Shown: in pieces, positions 11,307-40,331 of the stretch
How the letters are laid out: every line of letters starts with the position of its first letter
Position numbering within the stretch: position 1 is the stretch's first letter
DNA from: Macrostomum lignano
Taxonomy: Eukaryota
Length of the DNA: 58,622 nt
Reading direction: 5' to 3'
Assembly: GCA_002269645.1 (NCBI GenBank)
Contig: NIVC01004133.1
Coordinates: 1-58,622, forward strand
The notes under the pieces: generated by a model
Told to the model about the DNA's origin: nothing
Databases searched by the model: none
Seen by the model: the letters and a program-made list of their open reading frames with translations, nothing else
Position numbers and translations under genes: made by a program

Positions 11307-11415
11307 GGGGATTGTAGCCTAGTGGTTAGAGCGTCAGACTCGCGACTGAAAGGTCGGGAGTTCGATTCTCGCCCCACTCGCTCGGAACAATCTGTGTCCT
11401 TGAGCAAGAACCATC
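11307..11415 (+). mobile_element. Truncated tRNA-derived CORE-like SINE (family B)
   Basis: A-box TAGCCTAGTGG, B-box AGTTCGATTCT, followed by TGTGTCCTTGAGCAAG shared with the copies at 11956 and 32757. Confidence 0.8.
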
Positions 11416-11431
11416 TCGTCAATACATTTTG

Positions 11432-12210: not shown

Positions 12211-12352
12211 CTCGTAAATGGTGAATATGTGCAGGGCCGGCTTCCAATCCAGGTCTTTAGCTGTAGAGGTCCGTGATCTAATATTTGTTCTCCGCTTCTT
12301 TTCGTGCCAACGGTGCACTGTCTATCAATTAATCAATAAATCAATGTTTCAG

Positions 12353-12451
12353 AGCACACCAGCCCAGCTCTGGAGGAATTTATGGAACTAATTGCTACTA
12401 AAGTTTCGTTGAAAAAATTCGACAAATTCAAAGGCGGTTTGGACTCGAAGT
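12353..12451 (+). CDS. SIPA1L: SIPA1L-like RapGAP domain exon (not in the ORF track)
   Basis: TTTCAG|AG acceptor, phase 1. Encodes (E)HTSPALEEFMELIATKVSLKKFDKFKGGLDSK. Donor T|GTGAGT. Confidence 0.9.
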
Positions 12452-12646
12452 GTGAGTATAAGACTTGGCGTGACGCAAATGTGGGATCGCTGCTCCTACA
12501 ATCGCTGTATACAGAGGGGTCTAGTTCTGAGCATATATGAGCGGGGATAAGGGCCGCAAATAATCTCCGACCCTTAGCAACACGGGGGGGTATATTAATC
12601 CTTTTGACTTCATTCTCTTTTTCTTCATCAGCGGCAGCAGAATGCT

Positions 12647-12677
<31 letters not shown>

Positions 12678-13169
12678 TGCGTCTCTCTCTCTCCAGCCGA
12701 CAAAGGAAAACGCGGGGGAGGGAGTGAGATTAAGGCGGGGCAAATGCAGGGCAGGTAAGAATGCGTGATGAGCTGAGAAAGGGTAGGAAGAGAGCTGAGT
12801 GGGGATTTTCGAATGCGGACTTGCGGTACGCGGGCGGGCATCTGCGTGTAGGGAAGAGAGCTCGGGGTGTTTCGGCGTGTCAGTTTTCTTCTCGCCCTGA
12901 TTTCAGCGGCGGCTGCTGTAAGACAGAAAGAGACGGTAAGGCAGGGATGCGGGGTACATAGAGGCTGAACGCTCGCTTCTCTATCTGCAGCCGCTTCTCC
13001 GCCCCAGTTTGCCGGTTTTGCTATTAACAGATTTCTAGCCTTGCTTTCGCATAGCTCTCCCCATTGCTTGCATGGGGAAATGTTTTGTACATTGCTTTGC
13101 TACATAAATTTTGCTATTGCGATAGTCTTTTGGGAAAGAGAGCTCTCTGCTCCGCTCTGCGCCATCTCT

Positions 13170-14055
13170 GTCTGTCTAATCTACTTGTCTCTGTGCCTGA
13201 TCTACCTGTCTGTGTTCCTGATCTACCTGTCTGTGTGCTTGATCTACCTGTCTGTGTTCCTGATCTACCTGTCTGTGTTCCTGATCTACCTGTCTGTGTT
13301 CCTGATCTACCTGTCTGTGTTCCTGATCTACCTGTCTGTGTGCCTGATCTACCTGTCTGTATGCCTGATCTACCTGTCTGTGTGCCTGATCTACCTGTCT
13401 GTGTGCCTGATCTACCTGTCTGTATGCCTGATCTACCTGTCTGTATGCCTGATCTACCTGTCTGTGTGCCTGATCTACCTGTCTGTGTGCCTGATCTACC
13501 TGTCTGTGTTCCTAATCTACCTGTCTGTATGCCTGATCTACCTGTCTGTGTTCCTGATCTACCTGTCTGTGTTCCTGATCTATCTGTCTGTGTTCCTGAT
13601 CTACCTGTCTGTGTGCCTGATCTACCTGTCTGTGTGCCTGATCTACCTGTCTGTGTTCCTAATCTACCTGTCTGTATGCCTGATCTACCTGTCTGTGTGC
13701 CTGATCTACCTGTCTGTGTTCCTGATCTACCTGTCTGTGTTCCTGATCTACCTGTCTGTGTTCCTGATCTACCTGTCTGTGTTCCTGATCTACCTGTCTG
13801 TGTTCCTGATCTACCTGTCTGTGTTCCTGATCTACCTGTCTGTGTGCCTGATCTACCTGTCTGTATGCCTGATCTACCTGTCTGTATGCCTGATCTACCT
13901 GTCTGTGTGCCTGATCTACCTGTCTGTGTGCCTGATCTACCTGTCTGTGTGCCTGATCTACCTGTCTGTGTTCCTGATCTACCTGTCTGTGTTCCTGATC
14001 TACCTGTCTGTGTGCCTGATCTACCTGTCTGTATGCCTGATCTACCTGCCTGTAT
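13170..14055. repeat. 21-bp minisatellite (CCTGATCTACCTGTCTGTGT/G)n
   Basis: Tandem array; intronic. Confidence 0.95.
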
Positions 14056-14649
14056 CTCTCATTTCGGCCCGTAACAGTGACTTCAAAGGATTATATGGGA
14101 ATGCCCTATCTGATGTAAATGTCGGGGATCAACGCAAAATAATAAGCTTACAAGCAGCGAGAAGTTTGGTTTTCGTTTTTTATTTAAAATCAAGTTACAA
14201 CCAAGATTTATAATATTAACACGAACAGGGAGGCAGATTTTTATGCCAAACTAATGAGCAGGAGATACCCGCGTGGCTCTCTAGAGAACAGTTAAAGTCA
14301 TAAATTAGTTGGCCTTATTGTCAAATTTGTACTTTTATTTACATATATAGAATCTCGGTCTGTTGCCGGCAGGAGATGGCCAAGTAATTATCGTGCAGTG
14401 GATAGCAGTTCCTCATTTTTGTCAGTTTTCTCTCTATGTACAGGTTTTATAATCCCGTGACAGGCTATGAGACGCTGTGCGCCTCTTTCCCAACCGGTTG
14501 CTTCTCCCAACTACAATCGTCTCCTAGCATTAGCATTGGGAAGGGTAGGAATTAATAAGCGCACTATTTTTCTATGCCGCCAATAACTTTTCCTAATGAT
14601 TTTTATTGATTATATAATGTAGCACTTGTATAAGCAAATGGAATTGGGC

Positions 14650-16540
14650 TCTACCCTCTCCCATGATCCTCTACCCTCTCCCATGTTCCTCTACCCTCTC
14701 CCGTGTTCCTCTACCCTCTCCCGTCTTCCTCTACCCTCTCCCGTGTTCCTCTACCCTCTCCCGTGTTCCTCTACCCTCTCCCGTGTTCCTCTATCCTCTC
14801 CCGTGTTCCTCTACCCTCTCCCGTGTTCCTCTATCCTCTCCCGTGTTCCTCTACCATCTCCCGTGTTGCTCTACCCTCTCCCTTGTTGCTCTACCCTCCC
14901 CCGTGTTGCTCTACCCTCTCCCGTGTTCCTCTACCCTCTCCTGTCTTCCTCTACCCTCTCCCGTGTTCATCTACCCTCTCCCGTGTTCCTCTACCCTCTC
15001 CTGTCTTCCTCTACCCTCTCCCGTGTTCCTCTACCCTCTCCTGTCTTCCTCTACCCTCTCCCGTGTTCATCTACCCTCTCCCTTGTTGCTCTACCCTCTC
15101 CTACCTTCCTCTACCCTTTCCCTTGTTCCTCTACCCTCTCCCGTGTTCCTCTACCCTCTCCCGTGTTGCTCTACCCTCTCCCATGTTCCTCTACCCTCTC
15201 CCGTGTTCCCCTACCCTCTCCCATCTTCCTCTATCCTCTCCCGTGTTCCTCTACCCTCTCCCATGTTCCTCTACCCTCTCCCGTGTTGCTCTACCCTCTC
15301 CCTTGTTGCTCTACCCTCTCCCGTCTTCCTCTACCCCTCCCGTGTTCCTCTACCCTTTCCCGTGTTCCTCTACCCTCTCCCGTGTTCCTCTACCCTTTCC
15401 CGTGTTGCTCTACCCTCTCCCTTGTTGCTATACCCTCTCCCGTCTTCCTCTACCCCTCCCGTGTTCCTCTACCCTCTCCCGTGTTCCTCTACCCTTTCCC
15501 TTGTTGCTCTACCCTCTCCCGTGTTCCTCTACCCTCTCCCTTGTTGCTCTACCCTCTCCCTTGTTGCTCTACCCTCTCCCGTCTTCCTCTACCCTCTCCC
15601 GTCTTCCTCTACCCCTCCCGTGTTCCTCTACCCTCTCCCTTGTTCCTCTACCCTCTCCCGTGTTCCTCTACCCTCTCCCGTGTTCCTCTACCCTCTCCCT
15701 TGTTCCTCTACCCTCTCCCGTGTTCCTCTACCCTCTCCCGTGTTCCTCTACCCTTTCCCGTCTTCCTCTGCCCTCTACTGCTTTCCTGTTCCCTCTCCTG
15801 TGTTCCTCTACCCTCTCCCGTGTTCCTCTACCCTCCCCCGTGTTCCTCTACCCTCTCCCGTGTTGCTCTACCCTCTCCCGTGTTCCTCTACCCTCTCCCG
15901 TGTTGCTCTACCCTCTCCCGTATTCTCTACCCTTTCCCGTGTTCCTCTACCCTCTCCCGTCTTCCTCTACCCTCTCCCGTGTTCCTCTACCCTCTCCCGT
16001 GTTCCTCTACCCTCTCCCGTGTTCCTCTATCCTCTCCCGTGTTCCTCTACCCTCTCCCGTGTTCCTCTATCCTCTCCCGTGTTCCTCTACCATCTCCCGT
16101 GTTGCTCTACCCTCTCCCTTGTTGCTCTACCCTCCCCCGTGTTGCTCTACCCTCTCCCGTGTTCCTCTACCCTCTCCCGTCTTCCTCTACCCTCTCCCGT
16201 GTTCCTCTACCCTCTCCCGTGTTCCTCTACCCTCTCCCGTCTTCCTCTACCCTCTCCCGTGTTCCTCTACCCTCTCCCGTGTTCCTCTACCCTCTCCCGT
16301 CTTCCTCTACCCTTTCCCGTGTTCCTCTACCCTTTCCCGTCTTCCTCTGCCCTATACTGCTTTCCTGTTCCCTCTCCTGTGTTCCTCTACCCTCTCCCTT
16401 GTTCCTCTACCCTCTCCCGTGTTCCTCTACCCTCCCCCGTGTTCCTCTACCCTCTACTGTTTTCCTGTACCCTCCTGTCTTTTTACCCTCTACCGTCTTC
16501 ATTTGCCCTCTCCCACCTTCCTCTACCCTCTCCTGCCTTC
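14650..16540. repeat. 20-bp pyrimidine-rich minisatellite (CCGTGTTCCTCTACCCTCTC)n
   Basis: ~1.9-kb tandem array ending ~50 bp before the exon at 16590. Confidence 0.95.
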
Positions 16541-16589
16541 CACTTTACTCTCTACACTGAACTGTCACACCAAACCGTCACACCTGCAG

Positions 16590-16980
16590 GCACAGGCGAT
16601 TACACCTATTATACTACTATGGGCGACTGCGAGCTGGTATTCCACGTGTCCACCATGCTGCCCTATTCAAATACTAACCGTCAGCAGCTGCTGCGCAAGA
16701 AGCACATCGGTAACGATATCGTTACTATAGTGTTCCAGGAGCCGGGGGCTCTGGCGTTCTCTCCTAGGACGGTTCGCAGCCAGTTCCAGCACGTGTTCAT
16801 TGTGGTCCGGGCGCACAACCCCTGCACTAAGAAGCTCTACTATTCGGTGGCCGTAGCCCGCTCGGAGGAGATGCCGGCGTTTGGGCCACCGTTCTCAGCC
16901 GGGCACCAGTTCGCCAGGGAGCCAGCGTTCAGGGAGTTCCTCCTGCGCAAGATCATCAACGGGGAGAACGCCGCGTTCAG
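16590..16980 (+). CDS. SIPA1L: SIPA1L-like RapGAP catalytic exon
   Basis: [27 protein letters not shown] (catalytic Asn thumb), [29 protein letters not shown]. Acceptor CTGCAG| and donor AG|GTGACT. Confidence 0.95.
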
Positions 16981-16999
16981 GTGACTTGGAGTCGGGAAC

Positions 17000-17027
17000 T
17001 AAGACAGACAGACAGAGGAGTACAGAA

Positions 17028-17094
<67 letters not shown>

Positions 17095-17145
17095 GGCAGG
17101 CAGGCAGACAGACAGACAGACAGACAGACAGACAGGCAGGCAGGC

Positions 17146-17182
<37 letters not shown>

Positions 17183-17239
17183 GCCAGGCAGACAGACAGA
17201 CAGACAGACAGACAGACAGGCAGGCAGGCAGAGGAGTAC

Positions 17240-17278
<39 letters not shown>

Positions 17279-17341
17279 GGCAGGCAGGCAGGAAGGCAGG
17301 CAGGCATGCAGGCAGAGGAGTACAGAGACAGACAGACAGAC

Positions 17342-17386
<45 letters not shown>

Positions 17387-17415
17387 GGCAGGCAGGCAGG
17401 CAGGCAGAGGAGTAC

Positions 17416-17483
<68 letters not shown>

Positions 17484-17491
17484 AGGAGTAC

Positions 17492-17563
<72 letters not shown>

Positions 17564-17645
17564 AGGAGTACAGAGACAGACAGGCAAACAGACAGACAGA
17601 CAGACAGACAGGCAGGCAGACAGACAGACAGACGCAGACAGACAC
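17000..17645. repeat. (GACA/GGCA)n microsatellite with interspersed GAGGAGTACAGA units
   Basis: Simple repeat; intronic. Confidence 0.95.
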
Positions 17646-17798
17646 GGAACAGACAAAGCAACACACTGCCAAGGTAATCACAAAACTTGCAGACCAACAA
17701 ACAGATACAAAGCACACCAACAAAACAGACTAATACATAGGCTACTGACCAGTGCCAGTGGGCTTGACGCCATCCTCCCCTTCCCTGACATGCCTCAG

Positions 17799-18096
17799 GT
17801 CAGAGAAGTTCTGCCAGATGCAGAAACGCACCCGTGAGGACCGGCTCAAGGAGCTGGCTGAATCGCATTCCGCCGCCGCCACTATCGACATAAAATCGAC
17901 GCGCTCTCTGCTTGGCAGCGGCCGGCGTCGCAGCTCCAAGTCGCTGACTGCCAGCAACGACGCCGTCAACCGACTGGTTGTTGAACTCAATGAAGCTTTG
18001 AGATTCGAAGTCACCCTGACCGAGCCTAACAATAGAGAGATGCGCTGCGACCTGCTTATTGGCCGCACTTACCTGGCCCTGCAGTACGGACAACAG
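17799..18096 (+). CDS. SIPA1L: SIPA1L-like exon (end of RapGAP domain)
   Basis: CTCAG|G, phase 2 compatible. Encodes SEKFCQMQKRTREDRLKELAE...ALQYGQQ. Donor CAG|GTGAGG. Confidence 0.9.
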
Positions 18097-18156
18097 GTGA
18101 GGATTATGTTTTGTTTATAATTGCCCATTGGTTTATATTTTCTTTAAAAGTATTTA

Positions 18157-18540
18157 CCCGATGAGAATCTCATGAGAACCACCCGATGAGAACCGCCCCA
18201 TCACCAATGAGAATCGCCCCATCACCAACAAGAATCGCCCCATCACCAACAAGAATCGCCCCATCACCAATGAGAATCGCCCCATCACCAATGAGAATCG
18301 CCCCATCACCAATGAGAATCGCCCCATCACCAATGAGAATCGCCCCATCACCAACAAGAATCGCCCCATCACCAACAAGAATCGCCCCATCACCAACAAG
18401 AATCGCCCCATCACCAACAAGAATCGCCCCATCACCAACAAGAATCGCCCCATCACCAATGAGAATCGCCCCATCACCAATGAGAATCGCCCCATCACCA
18501 ATGAGAATCGCCCCATCACCAATGAGAACCGCCCCATTCC
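18157..18540. repeat. 21-bp minisatellite (AATGAGAATCGCCCCATCACC)n
   Basis: Tandem array; intronic. Confidence 0.95.
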
Positions 18541-18612
18541 GAATCGCCCTTTAGCCTAAGTCTGTTCCCAAAGCCAGCAGTTGCTATACCCGGCCAATTG
18601 GCCAATCCCCAG

Positions 18613-19217
18613 GTGCTGCTATCGATCCCGACCGGCTGCCTGCTGTCGTGGCGCACAGGCCAGGCGGGAGAGCTCACTGTGTATTACAATCGCGGCGAGC
18701 TGCTCCGCATGCGCTGCTCAACCGAAACCGCCTGCCAGTTGGCGGCCCGCCGCCTGGCCTGGCTTGGCGAACAGGAAACCCCCGGCGCTTGCCAGGCCAT
18801 CGAAGTCACGGTGCACCGCGTCACGGCCTACGAGGCCAGCCTGAGCTTTGGCGTACAAGCCGACGCTTTCTACGTCCGCTCTGTGGACTCGGCCGCCCTG
18901 CCGGACGTGGCTAAAAACTCTCGTTTAGTAGAATTGTGCGGCGTGCCGATCTGCGCCATGCCGGAGGCGCGCGTATTCAACCTGTTGCAGACCGAGGCCC
19001 AGTTGGCACTCGTGCTGGTGCCGCCAACTTCAAAAGGCGCCGTCCGTTGTTCGCAGGAGTTGCGCGATATTTTCCTGACTAATCGAGCGCACGCTCTGTT
19101 CTGCCCAGCCGGGGCTGCCGGCAGCGGACAGGGCAGCCCGGAGGTCGGCCCGGACCATGGCGACTGTCGCTTCCTGGATGCGTCTCTGCTGCGCAGCGGA
19201 GAAGCCGCGGTTTCCGG
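18613..19217 (+). CDS. SIPA1L: SIPA1L-like exon containing the PDZ domain
   Basis: CCCCAG|GTG, phase 0. LSFGVQAD...SRLVELCGVPI...VFNLLQTEAQLALVLVPP parallels the SIPA1L PDZ (GSRLVEIC...VVIIPP). Donor GG|GTGAGA. Confidence 0.9.
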
Positions 19218-19317
19218 GTGAGAAATTCTTTTCTTTTCCACTCAGGCAGATTCAATCCTCATTTGCCCTGTGGATATTTTCCCTTTGTTCATTCATCCGC
19301 CAACCGGGTGGTATAAC

Positions 19318-27725: not shown

Positions 27726-29055
27726 GACCATGAGTCACCTGTGCTCAATACCGCTCACCAACCATGAGTCACCTGTGCCCCTCACTGCTCACCAACCATG
27801 AATCACCTGTGCCCCTCACCGCACACCAACCATGAATCACCTGTGCCCCTCACCGCTCACCAACCATGAGTCACCTGTGCTCAATACCGCTTACCAACCA
27901 TGAGTCACCTGTGCCCGTCACCGCTCACCAACCATGAGTCACCTGTGCCCCTCACCGCTCACCAACCATGAGTCACCTGTGCTCAATACCGCTCACCAAC
28001 CATGAATTACCTGTGCCCCTCACCGCACACCAACCATGAATCACCTGTGCCCGTCACCGCTCACCAACCATGAGTCACCTGTGCTCAATACCGCTCCCCA
28101 ACCATAAATCACCTGTGCCCCTCACCGCACACCAACCATGAATCACCTGTGCCCGTCACCGCACACCAACCATGAGTCACCTGTGCCCCTCACCGCACAC
28201 CAACCATGAGTCACCTGTGCCCCTCACCGCTCACCAACCATGAGTCACCTGTGCCCCTCACCGCACACCAACCATGAGTCATCTGTGCCCCTCACCGCAC
28301 ACCAACCATGAGTCACCTGTGCCCCTCACCGCACACCAACCATGAGTCACCTGTGCCCCTCACCGCACACCAACCATGAGTCACCTGTGCCCCTCACCGC
28401 ACACCAACCATGAGTCACCTGTGCTCAATACCGCTCCCCAACCATGAATCACCTGTGCCCCTCACCGCTCACCAACCATGAATCACCTGTGCCCCTCACC
28501 GCACACCAACCATGAGTCACCTGTGCCCCTCACCGCACACCAACCATGAGTCACCTGTGCCCCTCACCGCTCACCAACCATGAGTCACCTGTGCCCATTA
28601 CCGCTCCCCAACCATGAGTCACCTGTGCCCGTCACCGCTCACCAACCATGAGTCACCTGTGCCCCTCACCGCTCACCAACCATGAATCACCTGTGCCCCT
28701 CACCGCACACCAACCATGAGTCACCTGTGCTCAATACCGCTCCCCAACCATGAATCACCTGTGCCCCTCACCGCTCACCAACCATGAATCACCTGTGCCC
28801 CTCACCGCTCACCAACCATGAGTCACCTGTGCCCCTCACCGCACACCAACCATGAGTCACCTGTGCCCCTCACCGCACACCAACCATGAGTCACCTGTGC
28901 CCCTCACCGCTCACCAACCATGAGTCACCTGTGCCCATTACCGCTCCCCAACCATGAGTCACCTGTGCCCGTCACCGCTCACCAACCATGAGTCACCTGT
29001 GCCCCTCACCGCTCACCAACCATGAATCACCTGTGCCCCTCACCGCTCACCAACC
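27726..29055. repeat. 34-bp satellite (CCATGAGTCACCTGTGCCCCTCACCGCTCACCAA)n, array 1
   Basis: Period 34 (e.g. TGAGTC at 27901 and 27935). Same unit at 33045 and 36400. Confidence 0.95.
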
Positions 29056-29424
29056 AGACGCGAACATGCAAATTCGCAGTGTATTTAGAGAGTCAAATTA
29101 TGAAAAAACCAAGCCAAAGACTTGAACTGAAGATACGTTTGAATTTCGCCGGATTTTCTGCTATAACAATTTGTTAAATTTCCAAGGCGAGATTTTCCTG
29201 CAATTTCTCAGTTTATCTGCTATGTGGTGGGAAAAATTGGCGGCATTTTCAATTCCGCTTAGATTAACAGCTGTTTTACTTTCACACCGAAAAAGTTCAC
29301 GGAATTCCGTACATGTGATGCTGACGTCCTATCTGAAATTTTTTGTGATAGCCAGTCATAAATATCCGCTCTGTATAGGAGAAACAAAAATATCTCGAGT
29401 TTACGAGTAGAGTCAAAAACGAGA

Positions 29425-29832
29425 ACAGTCTAGCAATCCAGAACACGCAGTCTAGCAATCCAGAACACACAGTCTAGCAATCCATCATGCAGTCTAGCAA
29501 TCCAGAACACACAGTCTAGCAATCCAGAACACACAGTCTAGCAATCCATCATACAGTCTAGCAATCCAGCATGCAGTCTAGCAATCCAGCATGCACAGTC
29601 TAGCAATCCAGCATGCACAGTCTAGCAATCCAGCATGCACAGTCTAGCAATCCAGCATGCAGTCTAGCAATCCAGCATTCAGTCTAGCAATCCAGCATGC
29701 AGTCTAGCAATCCAGCATGCAGCCTAGCAATCCAGCATTCAGTCTAGCAATCCAGCATGCAGTCTAGCAATCCAGCATTCAGTCTAGCAATCCAGCATGC
29801 AGCCTAGCAATCCAGCATTCAGTCTAGCAATC
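29425..29832. repeat. 20-22 bp minisatellite (CAGTCTAGCAATCCAGCATG[CA])n
   Basis: Abuts the stop codon of precursor A; paralogous array at 33750-33995. Confidence 0.9.
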
Positions 29833-29846
29833 CTCAATCGTAAATA

Positions 29847-30119
29847 TCAGTAGCCGCACCTTCCATAGTTGCTTCCGAACCTCAGGCTGTTTCTAAAGCC
29901 TCTCTTTTCTGCCTGGGCGGCGGCCCTCTGCCTCAGCAGCGACAGCAGCAGGGCCTCCTCATCATCCGCCCACTGCTGATCGCTCAGTCGGGCAGCGCCT
30001 TCGGCTTCGGCCGCCTCCACGGCAGCACCTGAAGCCGGACGGCCTTCAGCGGGGCTCCAAAGGGCGACTGCGAGCACCAGGAGCAGCGGCAGGACGAGCT
30101 TCGGGACTGGGCACTTCAT
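29847..30119 (-). CDS. Neuropeptide precursor A, allatotropin-like (predicted GFRNSLRFGSNY-amide)
   Basis: Hydrophobic signal peptide ending ..SPAEG, acidic spacer, KR cleavage, 12-mer, then Gly-Arg amidation/cleavage site. Family assignment is by eye against lophotrochozoan allatotropins (GFR...R.[AS].[GN][YF]amide). Confidence 0.8.
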   Translation of the reverse strand: MKCPVPKLVLPLLLVLAVALWSPAEGRPASGAAVEAAEAEGAARLSDQQWADDEEALLLSLLRQRAAAQAEKRGFRNSLRFGSNYGRCGY

Positions 30120-30411
30120 CGTTGTGAGCAGCTGTGCTGTGTTGATGATGAGCTGGCTTGTTATAACTGGCTGAGCTGAGGATGATGGGTGAGAGTGAGA
30201 TGAGTGAGAGTGAAATGAGTGAGTGTAAGACGAGTGAGAGTGAGATGGGTGAGAGAAAGATGAGTGAGAGTGAAATGAGTGAGAGTGAGACTGATGAGTG
30301 AGATGGGTGAGAGAAAGATGAGTGAGAGTGAAATGAGTGAGAGTGGGATAAGTGAGAGTGAGAATAGAGCACTACAACCGTGAGAGCCAGGGCAGCTGGC
30401 GGGAATCTCAC

Positions 30412-30545
30412 CTGAAGCTGTAGCACGGGAATTCGGTGGAGTTCGAGATCAGAGAGTCTCCAGGCGACAGGGATCGCTGAGCTGATCTGGGCTCCCTCAA
30501 TTTATAGGCGACTTAACCGAGTGGGCGCACCGGCAGCCAATGGGT
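30412..30545 (-). promoter_or_regulatory. Non-coding exon 1 and core promoter of precursor A
   Basis: TATAAA (minus strand) at 30501-30506, TCAG initiator-like site ~25-30 nt downstream, CCAAT box at ~30537, donor CAG|GTGAG at 30412/30411. Confidence 0.65.
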
Positions 30546-31199
30546 AGCCGGCTGCACCGCCCTGCTCTGCAAGGCATCGTGTGCGGGACATTTGGCACAC
30601 AATTTGATAATTAGAAAGTCAAACAGCTAGCGGTGGCTTCTCAAATATTGATTGTTAGCCAAGCCATTGCCTAATTTTCCTCGAGCACTCTCGGTCGTTG
30701 AATTCGAATTTAATTTTCACTATAGCGATGCAATGATTGAATCAGATTTTTGTCACCGTTTTTGCTCCGGCGTTGGAATAAAGCCTGGCTAACAAAATGA
30801 GGATGAAATGTTTCGGTGGAAAATGACAAATGCTGGAGGAGATTTAAGATTGACAAGCTGTTGAAACCAGGGGATTTTGAACCCGGGGAATTCCAATCCC
30901 CGGAACTATTTTTGCATGTATTCTGAAATCTAAGGCCACACTCAAACAAAAACTTGTTAATAGTTAGTAGGATAGAGGTAAACATAAAACGGAGTACATT
31001 TGTGTAAAATTAAGATTTGAGGCAAACATTGATATTGTTGGCTGGGGTGCTGCGCAGAATGTCAGGCAATGTCTCCCTGACTCTAAAACATGCATTGGCA
31101 AACTCTGGCCTCTGCCTCTGACTCTTCCTACGTCCCTTGGATCCTTTGAAACTTCTATCTTCTCTTCTGCTTCCTCTCTTCTCTCTCTCCTCTTATCTC

Positions 31200-31905
31200 A
31201 GAGTGAAAGTAGAGAGAGTGAAAGTACAGAGAGTGAAAGTAGAGAGTGAAAGTACAGTGAGTGAAAGTAGAGAGAGTGAAAGTAGAGAGAGTTAAAGTAG
31301 AGAGAGTGAAAGTAGAGAGAATGAAAGTACAGAGAGTGAAAGTAGAGAGTGAAAGTAGGGAGAGTGAAAGTATAGAGAGTGAAAGTAGAGAGTGAAAGTA
31401 CAGTGAGTTAAAGTAGAGAGAGTGAAAGTAGAGAGAGTGAAAGTAGAGAGAGTGAAAGTAGAGAGAATGAAAGTACAGAGAGTGAAAGTAGAGAGTGAAA
31501 GTAGGGAGAGTGAAAGTATAGAGAGTGAAAGTAGAGAGTGAAAGTACAGTGAGTTAAAGTAGAGAGTGAAAGTAGGGAGAGTGAAAGTATAGAGAGTGAA
31601 AGTAGAGAGTGAAAGTACAGTGAGTTAAAGTAGAGAGAGTGAAAGTAGAGAGAGTGAAAGTAGAGAGAGTGAAAGTAGAGAGAGTGAAAGTAGAGAGTGA
31701 AAGTACAGAGTGAAAGTACAGAGAGTGAAAGTAGAGAGAGTGAAAGTACAGAGTGAAAGTAGAGAGAGTGAAAGTAGAGAGAGTGAAAGTAGAGAGAGTG
31801 AAAGTAGAGAGAGTGAAAGTACAGAGTGAAAGTAGAGAGAGTGAAAGTAGAGAGATTGAAAGTAGGGAGAGTGAAAGTAGAGAGAGTGAAAATAGGAAGA
31901 GTGAA
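31200..31905. repeat. 13-15 bp purine-rich minisatellite (GAGAGTGAAAGTAGA)n
   Basis: Tandem array. Confidence 0.9.
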
Positions 31906-32449
31906 ACAGCGATAATTTAAGGAAAACAGTGAAAATTTTGTGTGGGTGGAGAGAGCATAAAGCGAGAAAACAATAAGTGTAAATATGGAAACTCTCTGAA
32001 ATTGCGGAACAAAGAGCTTTCAGTGCCAGCATTGAGTTGCTTTCATTTTTGCGACTCAATTGATTTGGTATTGCCAGCAGAAAAAAAATACAAAAATAAA
32101 TTGTCTTCAGTGTGCCAGTTTCAGATTTCGCAGGCACTCAGCTGCAGTTTTCTATCTTACAATGGAAGATGCAGGATTCTTGCACGCTTGATGAGCTCTT
32201 TAGCTTTGAGATTTTTTAATGCTGGTGCTGCCTTCCACAGTTGTCTAACAACAGTCTCTAGGCGAATATTGCGCTTTAGTGAATCTATTTTTTGTCTTTT
32301 ACTGCTTTCAATGGTTTCAATTTTCTATATTGTTTGCTTGAGGGCTTTAAGCAATATGCTTTGTGTTGGTAGTGAATTCAGTGCTCTGAAGGCCTGAAGC
32401 TCAGATTCTCTCATTCACCTTCTTGATTGGATGCCTGCCATTATAATAA

Positions 32450-32757
32450 ATAATGATAATAATAACTGATTACACCTGTCCTGATTTGCAGATGAGCAAC
32501 CGACAGCTCAGCCGCAGCTATTGCGCGGCGCATCTGAAGGCTGCGTACGGCTGTTCAGTCCAAGGACTGGGGGGTCGCCAGACACCCTCAATTACCCCAG
32601 CTAATGCTGGCACCCATTTTACAGCTGGGTGAACTGAAGCAATGCAGAGTTAAGCCTCTTGCTCAAGGACACAAACTGTTCAGAGTAGGTCGAGCATCGA
32701 ACCCCCGACCTTTCAGTCGTGATTGCGAAACTCCAACCACTGGGCTACGAACCTCCC
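32450..32757 (-). mobile_element. tRNA-derived CORE-like SINE (family B), near full length
   Basis: Reverse complement has A-box TAGCCCAGTGG, B-box GGTTCGATGCT, CORE-like TCCTTGAGCAAG..CACCCAGCTGTAAAATGGG, and ends in a (TTA)n-like tail. Aligns with 11956-12210. Confidence 0.8.
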
Positions 32758-33044
32758 TATTATGCTATTATGCAATTATAACAGTCCACCCGCATTCGTA
32801 CTGCGTTTCTTTGATGCCACGAAGAACAAAATACACTACTGAATTACTGTGAGTAATATAGTAAGAACTTAAGAGAAATATTTTGGCAGACTGCTTGCTA
32901 CCTGTGTGCTGTGCAAGAGGCATCGTGTCTGACGCAGTGTTTATCTTAGGCAATCGTATTGACACAGCCGGACCTTGCCTTTGCCTGTAGCAGTGCCAGT
33001 CAGTCCAAGTAACCAAGCTATTCAGGACATGCGCAGTGCCCAAC

Positions 33045-33430
33045 CATGAGTCACCTGTGCCCCTCACCGCTCACCAACCATGAGTCACCTGTGCTCAATA
33101 CAGCTCACCAACCATGAGACACCTGTGCTCAATACAGCTCACCAACCATGAGCCACCTGTGCCCATCATCGCTCACCAACCATGAGTCACCTGTGCTCAA
33201 TACAGCTCACCAACCATGAGTCACCTGTGCCCATCACCGCTCACCAACCATGAGTCACCTGTGCCCATCACGGCTCACCAACCATGAGTCACCTGTGCCC
33301 ATCACCGCTCACCAACCATGAGTCACCTGTGCCCATCACCGCTCACTAACCATGAGTCACCTGTGCCCATCACCGCTCACTAACCATGAGTCACCTGTGC
33401 CCATCACCGCTCACCAACCATGAGTCACTT
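33045..33430. repeat. 34-bp satellite, array 2
   Basis: Same unit as 27726-29055. Confidence 0.95.
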
Positions 33431-33749
33431 GTGACTTGGAAACCTGTGCCCTGCTTCTGTCATGTGAGCAGGTGCTTCAGCAATTTGATAACGCATTTCT
33501 TTTTGATGAAAAAATCAGAGATCGGTTTGGATATATGATGAATGCAATTTCGATTGTATTTATTTGTTTTCCAAATTGCCCAACCGATATTTTGTATCGA
33601 CTTAGATTCAACCAACAGTTTTTCAACGGTTTTTCTTCACCCTGAAAGCTTTCACCGGAATTGGCTTCAGTGGCGGAGTTGAAATTTTTGTCTTTGCATT
33701 TTTCCGTCCGGATAACTGCCGTCCTTATCTGAAATTTTTTGTGGTAGAT

Positions 33750-33995
33750 AGTCTAGCAATCCATCATACAGTTTAGCAATCCAGCATGCACAGTCTAGCA
33801 ATCCAGCATGCACAGTCTAGCAATCCAGCATGCACAGTCTAGCAATCCAGCATGCACAGTCTAGCAATCCAGCATGCACAGTCTAGCAATCCAGCATGCA
33901 CAGTCTAGCAATCCAGCATGCACAGTCTAGCAATCCAGCATGCAGTCTAGCAATCCATCATGCACAGTCTAGCAATCCATCATGCACAGTCTAGC
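33750..33995. repeat. 22-bp minisatellite (CACAGTCTAGCAATCCAGCATG)n
   Basis: Paralog of 29425-29832; abuts the stop codon of precursor B. Confidence 0.9.
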
Positions 33996-34010
33996 TATCT
34001 ATTCATCATG

Positions 34011-34250
34011 TTAGGAGCCGCACCTTCCATAGTTGCTGGCAAACCTTAGAGTGCCTCTAAAGCCTCTCTTTTCAGCCTGGGCGGCGGCCCTCTGCCTCAG
34101 CAGCAACAGCAGCAGGGCCCCCTCTGCATCCGCCCACAGCCAATCTTTCAGTTCGGCAGCTGCTGCAGGACGGCCTTCAGCGGGGCTCCATAGGGCGACT
34201 GCGAGCACCAGGAGCAGCGGCAGGACGACCTTCAGGACTGGGCACTTCAT
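34011..34250 (-). CDS. Neuropeptide precursor B, allatotropin-like (predicted GFRGTLRFASNY-amide)
   Basis: Paralog of 29847-30119 with the same signal peptide and KR/GR sites and a shorter spacer. Confidence 0.8.
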   Translation of the reverse strand: MKCPVLKVVLPLLLVLAVALWSPAEGRPAAAAELKDWLWADAEGALLLLLLRQRAAAQAEKRGFRGTLRFASNYGRCGS

Positions 34251-34299
34251 CGTTGTGAGCTGGGCTTGCGCAATGAGCTTAGTTGAGGGTGATTTGTGA

Positions 34300-34960
34300 G
34301 AGTGGGATGGGTGAGAGTGAGATGAGTGAGAGTGAGATGAGTGAGAGTGAGATGAGTGAGAGTGAGATGAGTGAGAGTGAGATGAGTGAGAGTGAGATGA
34401 GTGAGAGTGAGATGAGTGAGAGTGAGATGAGTGAGAGTGAGATGAGTGAGAGTGAGATGAGTGAGAGTGAGATGAGTGAGAGTGAGATGAGTGAGAGTGA
34501 GATGAGTGAGAGTGAGATGAGTGAGAGTGAGATGAGTGAGAGTGAGATGAGTGAGAGTGAGATGAGTGAGAGTGAGATGAGTGAGAGTGAGATGAGTGAG
34601 AGTGAGATGAGTGAGAGTGAGATGAGTGAGAGTGAGATGAGTGAGAGTGAGATGAGTGAGAGTGAGATGAGTGAGAGTGAGATGAGTGAGAGTGAGATGA
34701 GTGAGAGTGAGATGGGGGATGGGTGAGAGTGAGATGAGTCAGAGTGAGATAGGTGAGAGTGATATGGGTGAGAGTGAGATGGGTGAGAGTGATATGGGTG
34801 AGAGTGATATGGGTGAGAGTGATATGGGTGAGAGTGAGATGGGTGAGAGTGATATGGGTGAGAGTGAAATGAGTGAGAGTAAAATAAGTGAGAGTGAAAT
34901 GAGTGAGAGTGAAATGAGTGAGAGTGAAATGAGTGAGAGTGACATAAGTGAGAGTGAGAA
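34300..34960. repeat. 15-bp minisatellite (GAGTGAGAGTGAGAT)n in intron 1 of precursor B
   Basis: Highly homogeneous array; shorter paralog at 30180-30362. Confidence 0.95.
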
Positions 34961-35007
34961 TAGAGCACTACAACCGTGAGAGCCAGGGCAGCTGGCGGGA
35001 ATCTCAC

Positions 35008-35140
35008 CTGAAGCTGTAGCACGGGAATTCGGTGGAGTTCGAGATCAGAGAGTCTCCAGGCGGCAGGGATCGCTGAGCTGATCAGGGCACCCTCAGTTTA
35101 TAGGCGACTTGACCGAGTGGGCGCACCGGCAGCCAATGGG
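35008..35140 (-). promoter_or_regulatory. Non-coding exon 1 and core promoter of precursor B
   Basis: TATAAA (minus strand) at 35097-35102, CCAAT box, donor CAG|GTGAG. Nearly identical to 30412-30545. Confidence 0.65.
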
Positions 35141-35529
35141 ACCGGCTGGGCGTTAACCCGAATATCCGTGAAGCCGGCCGTGCCAATCAATTCAAGACGC
35201 ATCGAGTGCCATATCTGGATGTTTTTGATTAACCGAGTGAAAACGCATCGCTTGTGAAAGTCCAGGAACGTGACAAAGGGTTTTATTCCAAAGAGTTATT
35301 TTCGTTCAAAATTCATTTGATATTTTTCTGTAAATGCAAATTAATTGCAGTCAAAAAGCAATTCGCTGTGATTGCTCTCAGCAGCTGTCAGAGATAAGGG
35401 CTGTCGTGTCGCTTAATTGCTTTGCGAATAAACTCATTGCATGCTCTAAAAAATGACAAAAAATACGGCAATTAATCTGCTTTGTTGGCTGCTGCTTGAT
35501 GCCTGTGTGCGCTGCAATGCAGATTGCGC

Positions 35530-36105
35530 TTATTCCACTGGGTGCTTATTCCACTGGGTGCTTATTCCACTGGGTGCTTATTCCACTGGGTGCTTATTCC
35601 ACTGGGTGCTTATTCCACTGGGTGCCTATTCCACTGGGTGCTTATTCCACTGGGTGCTTATTCCACTGGGTGCTTATTCCACTGGGTGCTTATTCCACTG
35701 GGTGCTTATTCCACTGGGTGCTTATTCCACTGGGTGCTTATTCCACTGGGTGCTTATTCCACTGGGTGCTTATTCCACTGGGTGCTTATTCCACTGGGTG
35801 CTTATTCCACTGGGTGCTTATTCCACTGGGTGCTTATTCCACTGGGTGCTTATTCCACTGGGTGCTTATTCCACTGGGTGCTTATTCCACTGGGTGCTTA
35901 TTCCACTGGGTGCTTATTCCACTGGGTGCTTATTCCACTGGGTGCTTATTCCACTGGGTGCTTATTCCACTGGGTGCTTATTCCACTGGGTGCTTATTCC
36001 ACTGGGTGCTTATTCCACTGGGTGCTTATTCCACTGGGTGCTTATTCCACTGGGTGCTTATTCCACTGGGTGCTTATTCTACTGGGTGCTTATTCCACTG
36101 GGTGC
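35530..36105. repeat. 16-bp minisatellite (TTATTCCACTGGGTGC)n
   Basis: Near-perfect tandem array. Confidence 0.95.
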
Positions 36106-36399
36106 TTGTCCCATTGATTGCTTAAATTTCCTGTTCCATAATGGTTTCTCACCTTTTCAATTCAAATATCGACCGAACATCATTAACATTAACAGTAGCA
36201 TGTTGAGAGCTTGGTTTTTTCTTGGTCAATAACATTCCTGTAGATAATATATGAATGTAATAACATCTGTAATGAAAACGTTGTTTGTTTTAACCTTAGC
36301 TGCTTCAAAGAGTACACTGAACTTGTCGATGAAGTCGTCAATGCTTAGCATTTTAAATCATGCCCGTTTGTTTGAGTCTAGGTCTAAACGTCTATCCCT

Positions 36400-38390: not shown

Positions 38391-38699
38391 TCACATCCCA
38401 AGGGCGTCAAGCAGGCGCCGGAACTCGGAGAAGTCGATGAACCCATCCCGGTTGGTGTCGGCGTGGCGGATCATCTGGCGGACGTCCTCCTCGGAGATCT
38501 CCTCACCCAAGCTGCTCATGACGCTCTTGAGCTCCTCTGGGCTGATGAAGCCGTCACCGTTCTTGTCGAAGGCTTTGAACAGCTCTTGAAGGTCCTCGGT
38601 GCTGGCCGCCTGGCTGCCGCTACGGTTTTCCATCATGCTGATGAACTCCTCGAATTCGATGGTGCCGTTGCCATCCAAGTCGACGTCCTTGATCATGTC
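38391..38699 (-). CDS. Calmodulin-like protein, exon 2 (EF-hands 2-4)
   Basis: CTCCAG|GAC, phase 0. EF loops DLDGNGTIEFEE, DKNGDGFISPEE, DTNRDGFIDFSE. Stop at 38391-38393. Confidence 0.95.
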   Translation of the reverse strand, partial: DMIKDVDLDGNGTIEFEEFISMMENRSGSQAASTEDLQELFKAFDKNGDGFISPEELKSVMSSLGEEISEEDVRQMIRHADTNRDGFIDFSEFRRLLDALGM

Positions 38700-39614
38700 C
38701 TGGAGGGTTGAAGGTTGATCTAGCTGACATAGTGGCTGCTTCTATCTATCTAGGTATGTGACTGATTTCAGAATAACAGCTTGCAGCTAAAAAAAGAATT
38801 TCGACATAAAATACGCATATGAGAGTTGCTGTGATGTCAAGGCTGATAGGGGGGAATTGCTGTAATGCTGTGGCTCAAGGCTCATGTTAGGAAGTGCGGA
38901 AAGTTCAAGGTTCATGTGGGGAATTGCTGAGATGCCGAGGGTCAATTCAGAGTCAGTGACTGTACAATGTCAGAATCTACGTGTAATTTATTAAAAAATA
39001 TTTCTTTCTTTCTTTCTTGCCTCCAAAATCAATACCGGTTGATGACGTAATCTTGAAAGTGATCCTTAAAGCTTAAGTACAAAATAAATTTCAATTCATT
39101 GCCACTGATACCGTCCAAGGAAGAGCATTGAGAAGCTTTTTCAGTTAATCTAATAAGACTAATAAAACGGTCATTCACAAGTTTCTAATCAAAGCAAGTC
39201 ATAGTCTATGGTCGATGATGCGCTTTAACTCACTCTCACTTGCATCCAATCACTGAAACTTAGTAAATGGTTGCTAGAATAACTACGCTCGTATATGGAG
39301 ATGGAATTGAGACAATTAGCTATAAAGCGATGAAAACGAAAAAGGGCATGTTTGAGCGAGATACTCTATGTCGACATTTATAAGGTGAATGAAAGCGTAC
39401 AATACACGATTGAGCGTAATATGGGGTGGGACGATCAGAAAGAGTGAAAGTGGTGCGATCAATAATTTGGGACTGTACGTACGAGCAAGATAAATATGCT
39501 AACCCCTAATTGAGCGTACATTTAGCTATTGCAAACGTAAAAGTACAAGAAATACGGTGATACAGTGGCAGCTCAAGAACATCTATTGTCAAACGTCTAA
39601 GCGGTACGCAATGA

Positions 39615-39785: not shown

Positions 39786-39891
39786 TATAGTTGATGCTAC
39801 AAGTGAGTAAAATACGACAGAATCTACGACAAAATATTGTTTAAATTCTTCAAACCACAAGATATTTCAGACATAAGCATTTAACCAATAC

Positions 39892-40047
39892 CTTAATCTC
39901 CTCTTTGCTGGGTTCCTGGCCGAGATTCCGCATCACCGTGGCGAGCTCCTTGGCTGAGATTCGGCCGTCTCCGTTTTTGTCGAACATTTTAAAGGCCTCC
40001 GTGTACTCGTTGATTTGAGTCGGAGTCAGTTTGTGTCGCTGTGACAT
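39892..40047 (-). CDS. Calmodulin-like protein, exon 1 (EF-hand 1)
   Basis: MSQRHKLTPTQINEYTEAFKMFDKNGDGRISAKELATVMRNLGQEPSKEEIK, donor AAG|GTATTG. Spliced product is 154 aa. Confidence 0.95.
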
Positions 40048-40331
40048 GATTGAGGCCGGCTTTTGAAAGCTTTAAGATTGAAGGAATTGTGACAGGCTGA
40101 ACCGTTGGTTATCCAGAGCTGGGACAGAGCCGCAGGCGGGCAATGCTATAAAATAAATAAGGTGAGAAGCGAAACCAGGTAACGACAAGTTTCAATCTGG
40201 CACAATGAGACACGACAGATAGACAAACAGAATAAGAGAAAGAAAAGAGAAGGGAGCACAAGCTCTGGCTACTAGCTATAGTTTTGAGCAGTTGGTGTTT
40301 GTTTTGTACATTAAATAATAAATGTACGGTG

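What the first reader, a model, noticed from the sequence alone, without database searches (positions are those of the whole stretch)
29847..34250. Tandem pair of allatotropin-like neuropeptide precursors
Seen: two small secreted precursors, each with a single KR-flanked, Gly-terminated 12-mer (GFRNSLRFGSNY-G-R; GFRGTLRFASNY-G-R), a TATA/CCAAT promoter and a non-coding first exon. Known: mollusc and annelid allatotropins start GF[RK] and end R-x-[AS]-x-G-[YF]amide (e.g. Aplysia GFRLNSASRVAHGYamide), and allatotropin is the protostome orexin counterpart. Inference: short, divergent allatotropin/orexin-type ligands, or a new family. Short genes like these are easily missed by annotation. I cannot tell whether they have been described.
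Basis: partly seen in the sequence, partly recalled or inferred. Interest (0 to 1): 0.8.

Follow-up and report, generated by a model that had tools for sequence, protein, structure and literature searches.

The report
Two flatworm allatotropin-like neuropeptide genes
Two neighbouring small genes of the flatworm Macrostomum lignano each encode a secreted precursor that should be cut into one amidated 12-residue signalling peptide resembling allatotropin, a hormone family whose receptors are reported in flatworms but whose ligand is so far reported only in a polyclad.

Summary
The window is Macrostomum lignano DNA. On the minus strand lie two tandem paralogues, each with a signal peptide, an acidic Ala-rich spacer, KR, one 12-mer (GFRNSLRFGSNY or GFRGTLRFASNY) and Gly-Arg. 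GenBank holds both as RNA-seq-derived "hypothetical proteins". I found no paper that mentions them.

One correction: the annotated transcripts splice right after Gly-Arg, so the proteins end ...NYGR*, not ...RCGY/RCGS. The predicted peptide is unchanged.

The allatotropin (AT) label is partly supported.
- For: profile comparison with AT precursors aligns exactly the peptide (78%, P about 2e-5). An AT-peptide HMM gives 16.6 and 15.0 bits, which shuffles almost never reach. Twelve-residue ATs exist in phoronids and nemerteans.
- Against: the score sits at the bottom of the range for true ATs (11.9-40.3 bits). The conserved [H/R]-G-[F/Y]amide end is S-N-Yamide here. All 40 AT precursors examined carry 43-108 further residues after the peptide, most with an EF-hand-like domain. 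Here the peptide is the C-terminus, and no remnant of that domain lies downstream.

Neuropeptide KY, the family with this architecture, does not match.

Verdict: a real, unannotated amidated-neuropeptide gene pair. It is about as likely to be a truncated AT-type precursor as a lineage-specific family. Interest is moderate.

The parts
30537..30541 (-). Gene 1: inverted CCAAT box (ATTGG on the gene strand)
   Evidence: The same 13-mer CCCATTGGCTGCC is present in gene 2. Paralogue similarity ends about 13 bp upstream of it.
30501..30506 (-). Gene 1: TATAAA box
   Evidence: Conserved in gene 2.
30412..30475 (-). Gene 1: non-coding exon 1. The 5' end is not mapped and is placed about 25-30 bp downstream of TATAAA by inference. 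The exon ends at the donor CAG|GTGAGA.
   Evidence: UniProt model P0004 reads through the exon 1/exon 2 junction.
30176..30411 (-). Gene 1: intron 1, mostly a 15-mer minisatellite (12 copies)
29860..30175 (-). Gene 1: exon 2, with ATG at 30119. Signal peptide 30042-30119; spacer 29907-30041; KR 29901-29906.
29865..29900 (-). Gene 1: codons of the predicted mature peptide GFRNSLRFGSNY. They are followed by Gly (29862-29864) and Arg (29861, 29860 plus 29332).
29333..29859 (-). Gene 1: intron 2 (GT..AG), mostly a 20-mer minisatellite (about 20 copies)
   Evidence: Splicing follows GenBank model P0001 on L001.
29057..29332 (-). Gene 1: exon 3. Its first base completes the Arg codon, the stop TAG is at 29329-29331, and the rest is 3' UTR. 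The 3' end is not mapped and there is no canonical AATAAA.
35133..35137 (-). Gene 2: inverted CCAAT box (ATTGG)
35097..35102 (-). Gene 2: TATAAA box
35008..35071 (-). Gene 2: non-coding exon 1 (5' end inferred), ending at the donor CAG|GTGAGA
34278..35007 (-). Gene 2: intron 1, a 15-mer minisatellite (about 45 copies). The acceptor ACTAAG|CTCATTG is inferred from alignment with gene 1.
34024..34277 (-). Gene 2: exon 2, with ATG at 34250. Signal peptide 34173-34250; KR 34065-34070.
34029..34064 (-). Gene 2: codons of the predicted mature peptide GFRGTLRFASNY, followed by Gly and Arg
33729..34023 (-). Gene 2: intron 2, a 22-mer minisatellite (about 11.5 copies)
   Evidence: GenBank model P0003 implies the same splice.
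33434..33728 (-). Gene 2: exon 3. Its first base completes the Arg codon, the stop TAA is at 33725-33727, and AATAAA is at 33559-33564.

Best explanation
These are two tandemly duplicated, transcribed genes of Macrostomum lignano. Each encodes a small prepropeptide (87 and 76 aa).

Predicted processing:
1. The signal peptide is removed after A-E-G26.
2. A prohormone convertase cuts after Lys-Arg.
3. A carboxypeptidase removes the terminal Arg.
4. Peptidylglycine alpha-amidating monooxygenase turns the Gly into an amide.

The products would be GFRNSLRFGSNY-NH2 (1415.706 Da) and GFRGTLRFASNY-NH2 (1386.716 Da).

The peptides are most likely divergent members of the allatotropin/orexin-type family acting on an allatotropin/orexin-type GPCR. 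On this reading the precursor has lost the conserved C-terminal domain and now ends right after the peptide.

What is shown: the gene structure, the processing motifs, the transcript-derived gene models, and a non-random similarity of the 12-mer to allatotropins. What is inferred: the actual processing, neuronal expression, orthology and the receptor.
For: Anatomy and processing signals.

Transcription and splicing: GenBank models P0001 and P0003 come from an RNA-seq-guided annotation (PMC5730564).

Similarity of the peptide to AT:
- hhalign aligns only the peptide region, at 75-78% probability and P 1.7-2.5e-5.
- The AT-peptide HMM gives 16.6 and 15.0 bits. Shuffled 12-mers reach these in 0 of 5000 and 2 of 5000 trials, and 95 KR...G[KR] decoys from six-frame translation reach at most 3.6 bits.
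- tblastn of AT precursors against the window puts its best non-EF-hand hits on this peptide, for example the phoronid EKRGFRKGPHFGHGYGK at 59% identity over 17 aa.
- Twelve-residue ATs exist in 7 of the 40 examined: GFRKGPHFGHGYa, GFRSGPKYSHGYa, and the MS-confirmed SFKDEIDFGHGFa.
- R-F-[GA] at -6..-4 matches annelid R-F-S. Asn at -2 occurs in linguliform brachiopods (GHNFa).
- In the held spiralian precursor collections, KRGFR begins only ATs and nemertean leucokinins.

Context from the literature:
- AT/orexin-type receptors have been found by phylogeny in Fasciola and in a monogenean, with the ligand 'not yet reported in flatworms' (PMC6114109; PMC9645230).
- An orexin/allatotropin precursor is reported in a polyclad.
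- Loss of the precursor domain has a precedent in vertebrate orexin precursors (PMC5818035).
Against: - The C-terminal [H/R/Y]-G-[F/Y]amide, the best conserved part of ATs, is S-N-Yamide here. Ser at -3 occurs in 0 of 40 ATs. Gly at -2 is present in 38 of 40.
- The HMM score lies at the bottom of the leave-one-out range for true ATs (11.9-40.3 bits, most above 25). Only two aberrant Phoronis ATs score lower.
- All 40 AT precursors have 43-108 residues after the peptide, and most carry the EF-hand-like motif. Here there are none, and no remnant is detectable downstream of either gene (best 1.1 bits).
- Pfam, including PF08187 (the annelid AT-type tetradecapeptides), gives no hit.
- No relative outside M. 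lignano was found, so conservation of the peptide across species is unknown.
- The presence of an AT-type receptor in M. lignano could not be shown.
- The family label was proposed after seeing the peptide. I tested only one other family by profile.
Confidence: 0.5

Rival explanations
1. A lineage-specific (Macrostomum or flatworm) amidated neuropeptide family that is not an allatotropin orthologue. The resemblance (GFR start, aromatic amide end) would be convergent, and the peptides would act on a different receptor. They might belong to one of the flatworm 'npp' families, whose lists I could not read.
For: - No homologue outside M. lignano appeared in a word-indexed search of 5.8 billion proteins or in a full profile search of 1.84 billion representatives.
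- The precursor architecture is unlike all 40 ATs.
- H-G at -3/-2 is absent.
- The score is lower than nearly all true ATs.
- Pfam gives no hit.
- Most flatworm neuropeptide families are said to show little similarity to those of other bilaterians (my recollection of Koziol et al. 2016; the paper is not held).
Against: The similarity to the AT peptide is far above shuffles and decoys and covers both ends plus the internal R-F-[GA]. The length equals phoronid and nemertean ATs. Flatworm AT-type receptors lack a known ligand.
Confidence: 0.33
2. A secreted, amidated bioactive peptide that is not neuronal, for example a product of prostate, adhesive or other gland cells such as a seminal-fluid or defensive peptide. 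It would use the same convertase and amidation machinery.
For: The genes are species-restricted, tandemly duplicated and diverge within the peptide itself (3 of 12 residues, 8 nt differences in 36 nt). That pattern is also seen in fast-evolving secretory products.
Against: The architecture of a single short peptide between KR and G-R, with an acidic helical spacer, is the classical neuropeptide precursor plan. The 12-mers are identical between the two independent copies of the locus, while 1 and 4 residues changed elsewhere (too few changes for a test). The peptide has AT-like features.
Confidence: 0.1
3. A shortened member of the neuropeptide KY (NKY) family. NKY is the spiralian family whose peptide also sits at the very C-terminus of the precursor and ends in an aromatic amide followed by G-[KR]-stop.
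For: The architecture is shared: in all 23 NKY precursors examined the peptide is terminal, with 0-2 basic residues after Gly. NKY orthologues have been reported in flatworms (my recollection of the abstract of Koziol et al. 2016).
Against: hhalign against 23 NKY precursors gives 0.4% probability and E 0.14, and the only aligned stretch is in the signal peptide. NKY peptides are 35-45 residues long with a conserved FW.P.G..P...R core and an R-Y-amide end. Both features are absent here.
Confidence: 0.02
4. Transcribed but functionless ORFs, or decaying duplicates, embedded in minisatellite-rich DNA.
For: The locus is saturated with minisatellites, and the last exon carries only one coding base.
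Against: All four copies have intact frames (two paralogues in two copies of the locus). The signal peptide, KR and GR are conserved, as are the TATA and Y-box promoter and the canonical splice sites.
Confidence: 0.05

Closest known systems
Allatotropin (AT) / allatotropin-related peptide precursors of Spiralia. Examples: phoronid GFRKGPHFGHGYamide, nemertean SFKDEIDFGHGFamide, Platynereis GFRTGAYDRFSHGFamide, Aplysia GFRLNSASRVAHGYamide.
   Same: There is a single peptide per precursor, released at a basic site and amidated through Gly. It starts G-F-R. It is 12 residues long, as in phoronids and nemerteans. It has Arg-Phe-small at -6..-4 and an aromatic amide at the end. Profile alignment picks out exactly this region.
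   Different: S-N replaces H-G before the last residue. The peptide lies at the extreme C-terminus after a 34-45 aa spacer, instead of being followed by 43-108 residues that usually carry an EF-hand-like domain (KFVDxNGDGxVSxxEL). The basic signal after Gly is a single Arg at the protein end, not GKR.
Vertebrate orexin precursors
   Same: They belong to the same superfamily according to receptor phylogeny. They have lost the precursor domain that protostome AT and hemichordate orexin-type precursors share (PMC5818035). The proposed domain loss would be a parallel case.
   Different: Orexin precursors encode two longer peptides. No sequence similarity to them was tested or claimed here.
Neuropeptide KY (NKY) precursors of Spiralia
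   Same: The layout is signal peptide, long helical or acidic pro-region, dibasic site, and a terminal peptide ending in aromatic-amide, Gly and 0-2 basic residues before the stop.
   Different: The NKY peptide is 35-45 aa with an FW.P.G..P core and an RYamide end. There is no profile similarity (0.4%).
Nemertean leucokinins (GFRPWGamide)
   Same: They begin KR-GFR.
   Different: They are multi-copy hexapeptides ending in WGamide. They are otherwise unrelated.

Membership tests
Amidated neuropeptide / peptide-hormone precursor (generic) | N-terminal signal peptide | tested here: met
   MKCPVPK, a 12-14 residue hydrophobic core (mean KD 3.1) and A-E-G at -3..-1, in both genes. SignalP was not available, so this is a rule-based reading.
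Amidated neuropeptide / peptide-hormone precursor (generic) | Peptide flanked by a dibasic convertase site and a Gly-basic amidation signal | tested here: met
   ...AE-KR-[12-mer]-G-R in both paralogues and in both copies of the locus
Amidated neuropeptide / peptide-hormone precursor (generic) | Gene is transcribed and spliced | tested here: met
   GenBank models BOX15_Mlig008911g1 and BOX15_Mlig024750g1 end ...NYGR* through the intron 2 splice. The annotation is RNA-seq-guided (PMC5730564). I did not see the reads themselves.
Amidated neuropeptide / peptide-hormone precursor (generic) | Expression in neurons or endocrine cells; mature peptide detectable | not testable with these tools
   No expression or peptidomic data for these genes are in the held literature.
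Allatotropin/orexin-type | Peptide starts G-F-[RK] directly after the cleavage site | tested here: met
   KR|GFR in both. 26 of the 40 ATs examined start G-F-[RK] at the predicted cleavage site, and four more keep G-F-[RK] one or two residues in.
Allatotropin/orexin-type | Peptide ends [H/R/Y]-G-[F/Y]-amide | tested here: not met
   The peptides end S-N-Y-amide. Position -1 is aromatic (met). Position -2 is Gly in 38 of 40 ATs and Asn only in Lingula and Glottidia. Position -3 is Ser in 0 of 40.
Allatotropin/orexin-type | Single copy, 12-15 residues | tested here: met
   One 12-mer per precursor. 7 of 40 ATs are 12-mers.
Allatotropin/orexin-type | Peptide lies early in the precursor and is followed by a long C-terminal part with a conserved (EF-hand-like) domain | tested here: not met
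   0 residues follow the G-R, against 43-108 in all 40 ATs. The domain is seen in alignment A2. No remnant lies downstream of either gene (best 1.1 bits). The domain is also absent from some accepted ATs (rhynchonelliform brachiopods, hymenopterans, scaphopod paralogues) and from vertebrate orexin precursors.
Allatotropin/orexin-type | Significant profile similarity to family members | tested here: inconclusive
   hhalign gives 75-78% probability and P about 2e-5 over 18-19 columns. The HMM gives 16.6 and 15.0 bits, well above shuffles but at the low end for true ATs. Pfam PF08187 and all other Pfam models give no hit.
Allatotropin/orexin-type | An AT/orexin-type receptor exists in the same species | tested here: inconclusive
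   A search with the Platynereis AT receptor gave 897 hits. Only the best 120 are listed and none is a flatworm. Such receptors are reported in Fasciola and a monogenean.
Allatotropin/orexin-type | Peptide activates an AT/orexin-type GPCR | not testable with these tools
   This needs a cell-based receptor assay.
Neuropeptide KY | Terminal 35-45 aa peptide with an FW.P.G..P...R core ending R-Y-amide | tested here: not met
   Only the terminal position and the aromatic amide are shared. hhalign gives 0.4%.

The most novel reading that the evidence does not exclude
The two 12-mers are the long-missing allatotropin/orexin-type ligands of non-polyclad flatworms. Their precursor would have lost the ancient C-terminal domain independently of vertebrate orexin precursors, leaving a one-base terminal exon as a scar. 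They would then give a template for finding the ligands of the orphan AT-like receptors in parasitic flatworms. The tandem pair, and possibly D-Phe2 isomers as in Aplysia, might address different receptors.
Probability: 0.35. Interest if true: 0.55.

Novelty: new member of a known kind. Interest (0 to 1): 0.35.

Why it matters
Flatworm neuropeptide systems are studied both for evolution and as anthelmintic targets. AT/orexin-type receptors have been placed by phylogeny in a trematode and a monogenean, and no ligand was known in flatworms when the trematode study was written. An orexin/allatotropin precursor has been reported only in a polyclad larva.

If these peptides are AT-type, three things follow:
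- A ligand would exist in the one flatworm with routine transgenesis and RNAi.
- The conserved AT precursor domain would be shown to be dispensable in a protostome.
- A divergent motif (GFR..LRF[GA]SNYamide) would be available for searching parasite genomes.

If they are not AT-type, they are still two unannotated, probably bioactive peptides of a model organism, with a compact promoter (Y-box plus TATA within about 50 bp) that could drive cell-type-specific reporters.

Tried and rejected
1. Pfam scan of both precursors: no family at E up to 10.

2. Search for relatives. The word-indexed search of 5.8 billion proteins and a full HMM search of 1.84 billion representatives with a 4-sequence profile returned only M. 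lignano gene models. Several of these are frame-shifted or fused predictions from older assemblies (P0002, P0004-P0007). One further hit is a spurious repeat protein (P0008).

3. Search for a canonical AT precursor in flatworms with a 26-sequence AT profile. It gave 55 hits, all arthropod, annelid, brachiopod or unnamed, and none from a flatworm. The search is clearly not exhaustive, because the Aplysia precursor itself was missing, so the absence means little.

4. Search for an M. lignano AT receptor with the Platynereis receptor. No flatworm appears among them, so the result is uninformative.

5. The NKY family as an alternative: rejected by profile comparison.

6. A hidden AT C-terminal domain in a downstream or alternative exon: none found. 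The only EF-hands in the window belong to a separate calmodulin-like gene at 38.4-40.1 kb.

7. String searches of the held spiralian precursor collections for SNYG[KR], NYG[KR]R, LRFGS and LRFAS found nothing relevant.

8. Selection test from paralogue and allele comparison: too few substitutions to say anything.

9. Literature. The polyclad AT sequence is not in the held supplement. Koziol et al. 2016 is not held. The planarian peptidome paper's main text has no GFR- or -Yamide peptide. The flatworm-specific npp families therefore remain unchecked.

10. Idea considered and dropped: the whole pro-region plus peptide as an NPY/NPF-like long peptide, prompted by LLSLLRQR. The KR site and the lack of an RF/RY-amide end argue against it.

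Full report
**What is there**

[quoted passage not shown] The only database proteins that match the two ORFs are M. lignano entries. Among them are GenBank "hypothetical protein BOX15_Mlig008911g1" (P0001, 87 aa) and "BOX15_Mlig024750g1" (P0003, 76 aa), both on contig NIVC01000158.1 of assembly GCA_002269645.1. The window is collinear with that contig at about 92-97% identity. It is therefore another allele, a homeologue or another assembly of the same locus.

- 29847..30119 reads ...AEKR-GFRNSLRFGSNY-GR-CGY*.
- 34011..34250 reads ...AEKR-GFRGTLRFASNY-GR-CGS*.

There is no third copy in the window.

**Gene structure**

Both genes have the same plan:
- An inverted CCAAT box (ATTGG on the gene strand) sits about 30 bp upstream of TATAAA.
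- A short non-coding exon 1 ends at CAG|GTGAGA.
- Intron 1 is filled by a 15-mer minisatellite.
- Exon 2 carries the whole reading frame.
- A second donor, AG|GTGCGG, lies inside the Arg codon that follows the amidation Gly.
- Intron 2 is filled by a 20-22-mer minisatellite.
- The last exon adds one base and then a stop (A|TAG, A|TAA).

The exon 1/exon 2 junction of gene 1 is read through by a frame-shifted UniProt model (P0004). The intron 2 splice is the one used in the GenBank models, which end ...NYGR*. That annotation was built from RNA-seq with StringTie/TACO (PMC5730564). So the models are indirect evidence that the genes are transcribed and spliced this way. The predicted peptide is unaffected.

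Similarity between the two paralogous units runs from a 34-mer minisatellite downstream of the genes up to about 13 bp beyond the ATTGG box.

**Predicted products**

Each protein has these parts:
- a textbook signal peptide, with basic residues in positions 1-7, the core VLPLLLVLAVAL, and A-E-G before the predicted cut;
- an acidic, Ala- and Leu-rich spacer of 45 or 34 residues;
- Lys-Arg, then the 12-mer, then Gly-Arg at the end.

By the established rules of prohormone processing (convertase, carboxypeptidase E-type trimming, PAM amidation) the products would be GFRNSLRFGSNY-NH2 (1415.706 Da) and GFRGTLRFASNY-NH2 (1386.716 Da). This processing is inferred, not shown. An additional cut after the internal Arg7 (basic residue at P8) cannot be excluded.

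The paralogues differ at three of the twelve peptide positions (N4G, S5T, G9A). The two copies of the locus have identical peptides but 1 and 4 replacements elsewhere. These counts are too small to test for selection.

**Is it an allatotropin?**

I took about 90 AT precursors from the supplement of Thiel et al. 2021 (PMC8557429) and used 40 of them.

Evidence for:
- Profile-profile comparison of the Macrostomum alignment with 26 or 40 AT precursors aligns just the peptide, AEKRGFRNSL--RFGSNYGR against R.KRGFR.....R..HGFGK. Probability is 75-78% and P is 1.7-2.5e-5.
- An HMM of the 40 AT peptides with their flanks scores the two peptides at 16.6 and 15.0 bits. Of 5000 shuffles of each 12-mer with the flanks kept, 0 and 2 reach these scores. 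The best of 95 KR...G[KR] segments from six-frame translations reaches 3.6 bits.
- The 2-residue gap is not special pleading. Phoronid (GFRKGPHFGHGYa, GFRSGPKYSHGYa) and nemertean (SFKDEIDFGHGFa, MS-confirmed) ATs are also 12-mers.
- Arg-Phe-[Gly/Ala] at -6..-4 matches the annelid Arg-Phe-Ser. Asn at -2 occurs in Lingula and Glottidia (GHNFa).
- In the held spiralian collections, a peptide starting KR|GFR is either an AT or a nemertean leucokinin hexapeptide.

Evidence against:
- Leave-one-out scores of true ATs are 11.9-40.3 bits, mostly above 25. Only two aberrant Phoronis sequences score below the Macrostomum peptides.
- The two most conserved residues before the C-terminal aromatic, His/Arg-Gly, are Ser-Asn here. 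Ser at -3 occurs in none of the 40.
- All 40 AT precursors place the peptide early in the precursor and continue for another 43-108 residues. In most, that tail contains the conserved EF-hand-like motif KFVDxNGDGxVSxxEL. In Macrostomum the peptide is the C-terminus.
- An HMM of the AT C-terminal part finds nothing downstream of either gene (best 1.1 bits). The only matches in the window are the EF-hands of an unrelated calmodulin-like gene at 38.4-40.1 kb.
- Pfam, which includes the annelid AT-type tetradecapeptide model PF08187, gives no hit.

Two points soften the architecture argument. Some accepted ATs lack the domain: rhynchonelliform brachiopods, Hymenoptera and scaphopod paralogues. The domain is conserved from protostomes to hemichordates but lost in vertebrate orexin precursors (PMC5818035). 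A terminal exon contributing a single coding base is what one might expect after loss of downstream coding exons, but that is speculation.

**Alternatives**

Neuropeptide KY precursors share the "peptide at the very end, aromatic amide, G-[KR]-stop" layout. Profile comparison gives 0.4%, and the NKY peptide is three times longer. I reject that reading.

I could not check the flatworm-specific npp families of McVeigh 2009 and Koziol 2016, because those papers are not held. The planarian peptidome paper's text has no similar peptide. This is the main gap. A lineage-specific family remains nearly as likely as a truncated AT. A non-neuronal secretory peptide cannot be excluded without expression data.

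**Context and novelty**

- No held paper contains the peptides or the gene identifiers.
- A 2018 GPCR survey of Fasciola found receptors with phylogenetic similarity to AT receptors and stated that the ligand had not been reported in flatworms.
- A monogenean has an AT/orexin-type receptor.
- An orexin/allatotropin proneuropeptide is expressed in neurons of a polyclad larva, and a 2026 review says many planarians and parasitic flatworms have lost such peptides.
- In Aplysia the AT-related peptide exists as L-Phe2 and D-Phe2 forms that prefer different receptors (PMC10089201). The conserved Gly-Phe start makes this worth testing here, but nothing in the sequence shows it.

**Verdict**

The finding is real and correctly read as a pair of small peptide-precursor genes that standard annotation left unnamed. 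The family label is a reasonable hypothesis with measurable but limited support:
- AT-type: about 0.5.
- Orphan lineage-specific neuropeptide: about 0.33.
- Non-neuronal secreted peptide: about 0.1.
- Functionless ORFs: about 0.05.
- Neuropeptide KY: about 0.02.

It is a new member of a known kind and of moderate interest. It matters chiefly to people working on flatworm or spiralian neuropeptide evolution.

Noticed in passing
window 38394-38741 and 39853-40071, minus strand: Exons of a calmodulin/troponin-C-like EF-hand protein gene (Pfam EF-hand_1 E 8e-30). It lies about 3-5 kb upstream of peptide gene 2 on the same strand. It is a separate gene and not the missing allatotropin C-terminal domain.
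   Followed up: partly
window about 9858-19221, plus strand: A Rap-GAP family gene. The Rap_GAP domain is at 16700-16984 (E 2e-25) and a weak, sub-threshold Rap-GAP_dimer match (E 1e-5, 26.2 bits against a cutoff of 27) is in ORF 9858-11243. Its introns are packed with minisatellites that create long spurious ORFs. A Rap_GAP gene flanks the peptide genes on contig NIVC01000158.1 too.
   Followed up: partly
window 3832-4791, minus strand: A 319-aa ORF with a hAT-family transposase dimerisation domain (E 1e-6), probably a transposon remnant.
   Followed up: no
window 32543-32762 (+) and 11951-12167 (inverted): Two copies (84% identical) of a tRNA-derived SINE-like element. One lies between the two peptide genes. 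Rfam calls a tRNA at 11957-12025 (37 bits), but ARAGORN finds no tRNA gene.
   Followed up: partly
window 28000-29056 / 33040-33433; 29426-29833 / 33750-33999; 30184-30363 / 34296-34959: Each paralogue carries the same three minisatellite families at the same relative places: a downstream 34-mer, an intron 2 20-22-mer and an intron 1 15-mer. Copy numbers differ widely (31 vs 11.6, 20 vs 11.5, 12 vs 45). So the arrays predate the duplication and have since expanded or contracted. Copy numbers also differ from the L001 copy of the locus.
   Followed up: partly
window 29329-29332 and 33725-33728, minus strand: The last exon of each peptide gene contributes a single coding nucleotide followed by the stop codon. 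The 3' UTRs of the two paralogues are otherwise poorly conserved (159 of 337 aligned positions identical). Only gene 2 has a canonical AATAAA.
   Followed up: partly
window 31200-31906 and 35528-36107: Further long minisatellites lie between and upstream of the two genes: a 15-mer of 48.6 copies and a 16-mer of 36 copies at 99% identity. Minisatellites are strikingly abundant in the stretches I examined.
   Followed up: no
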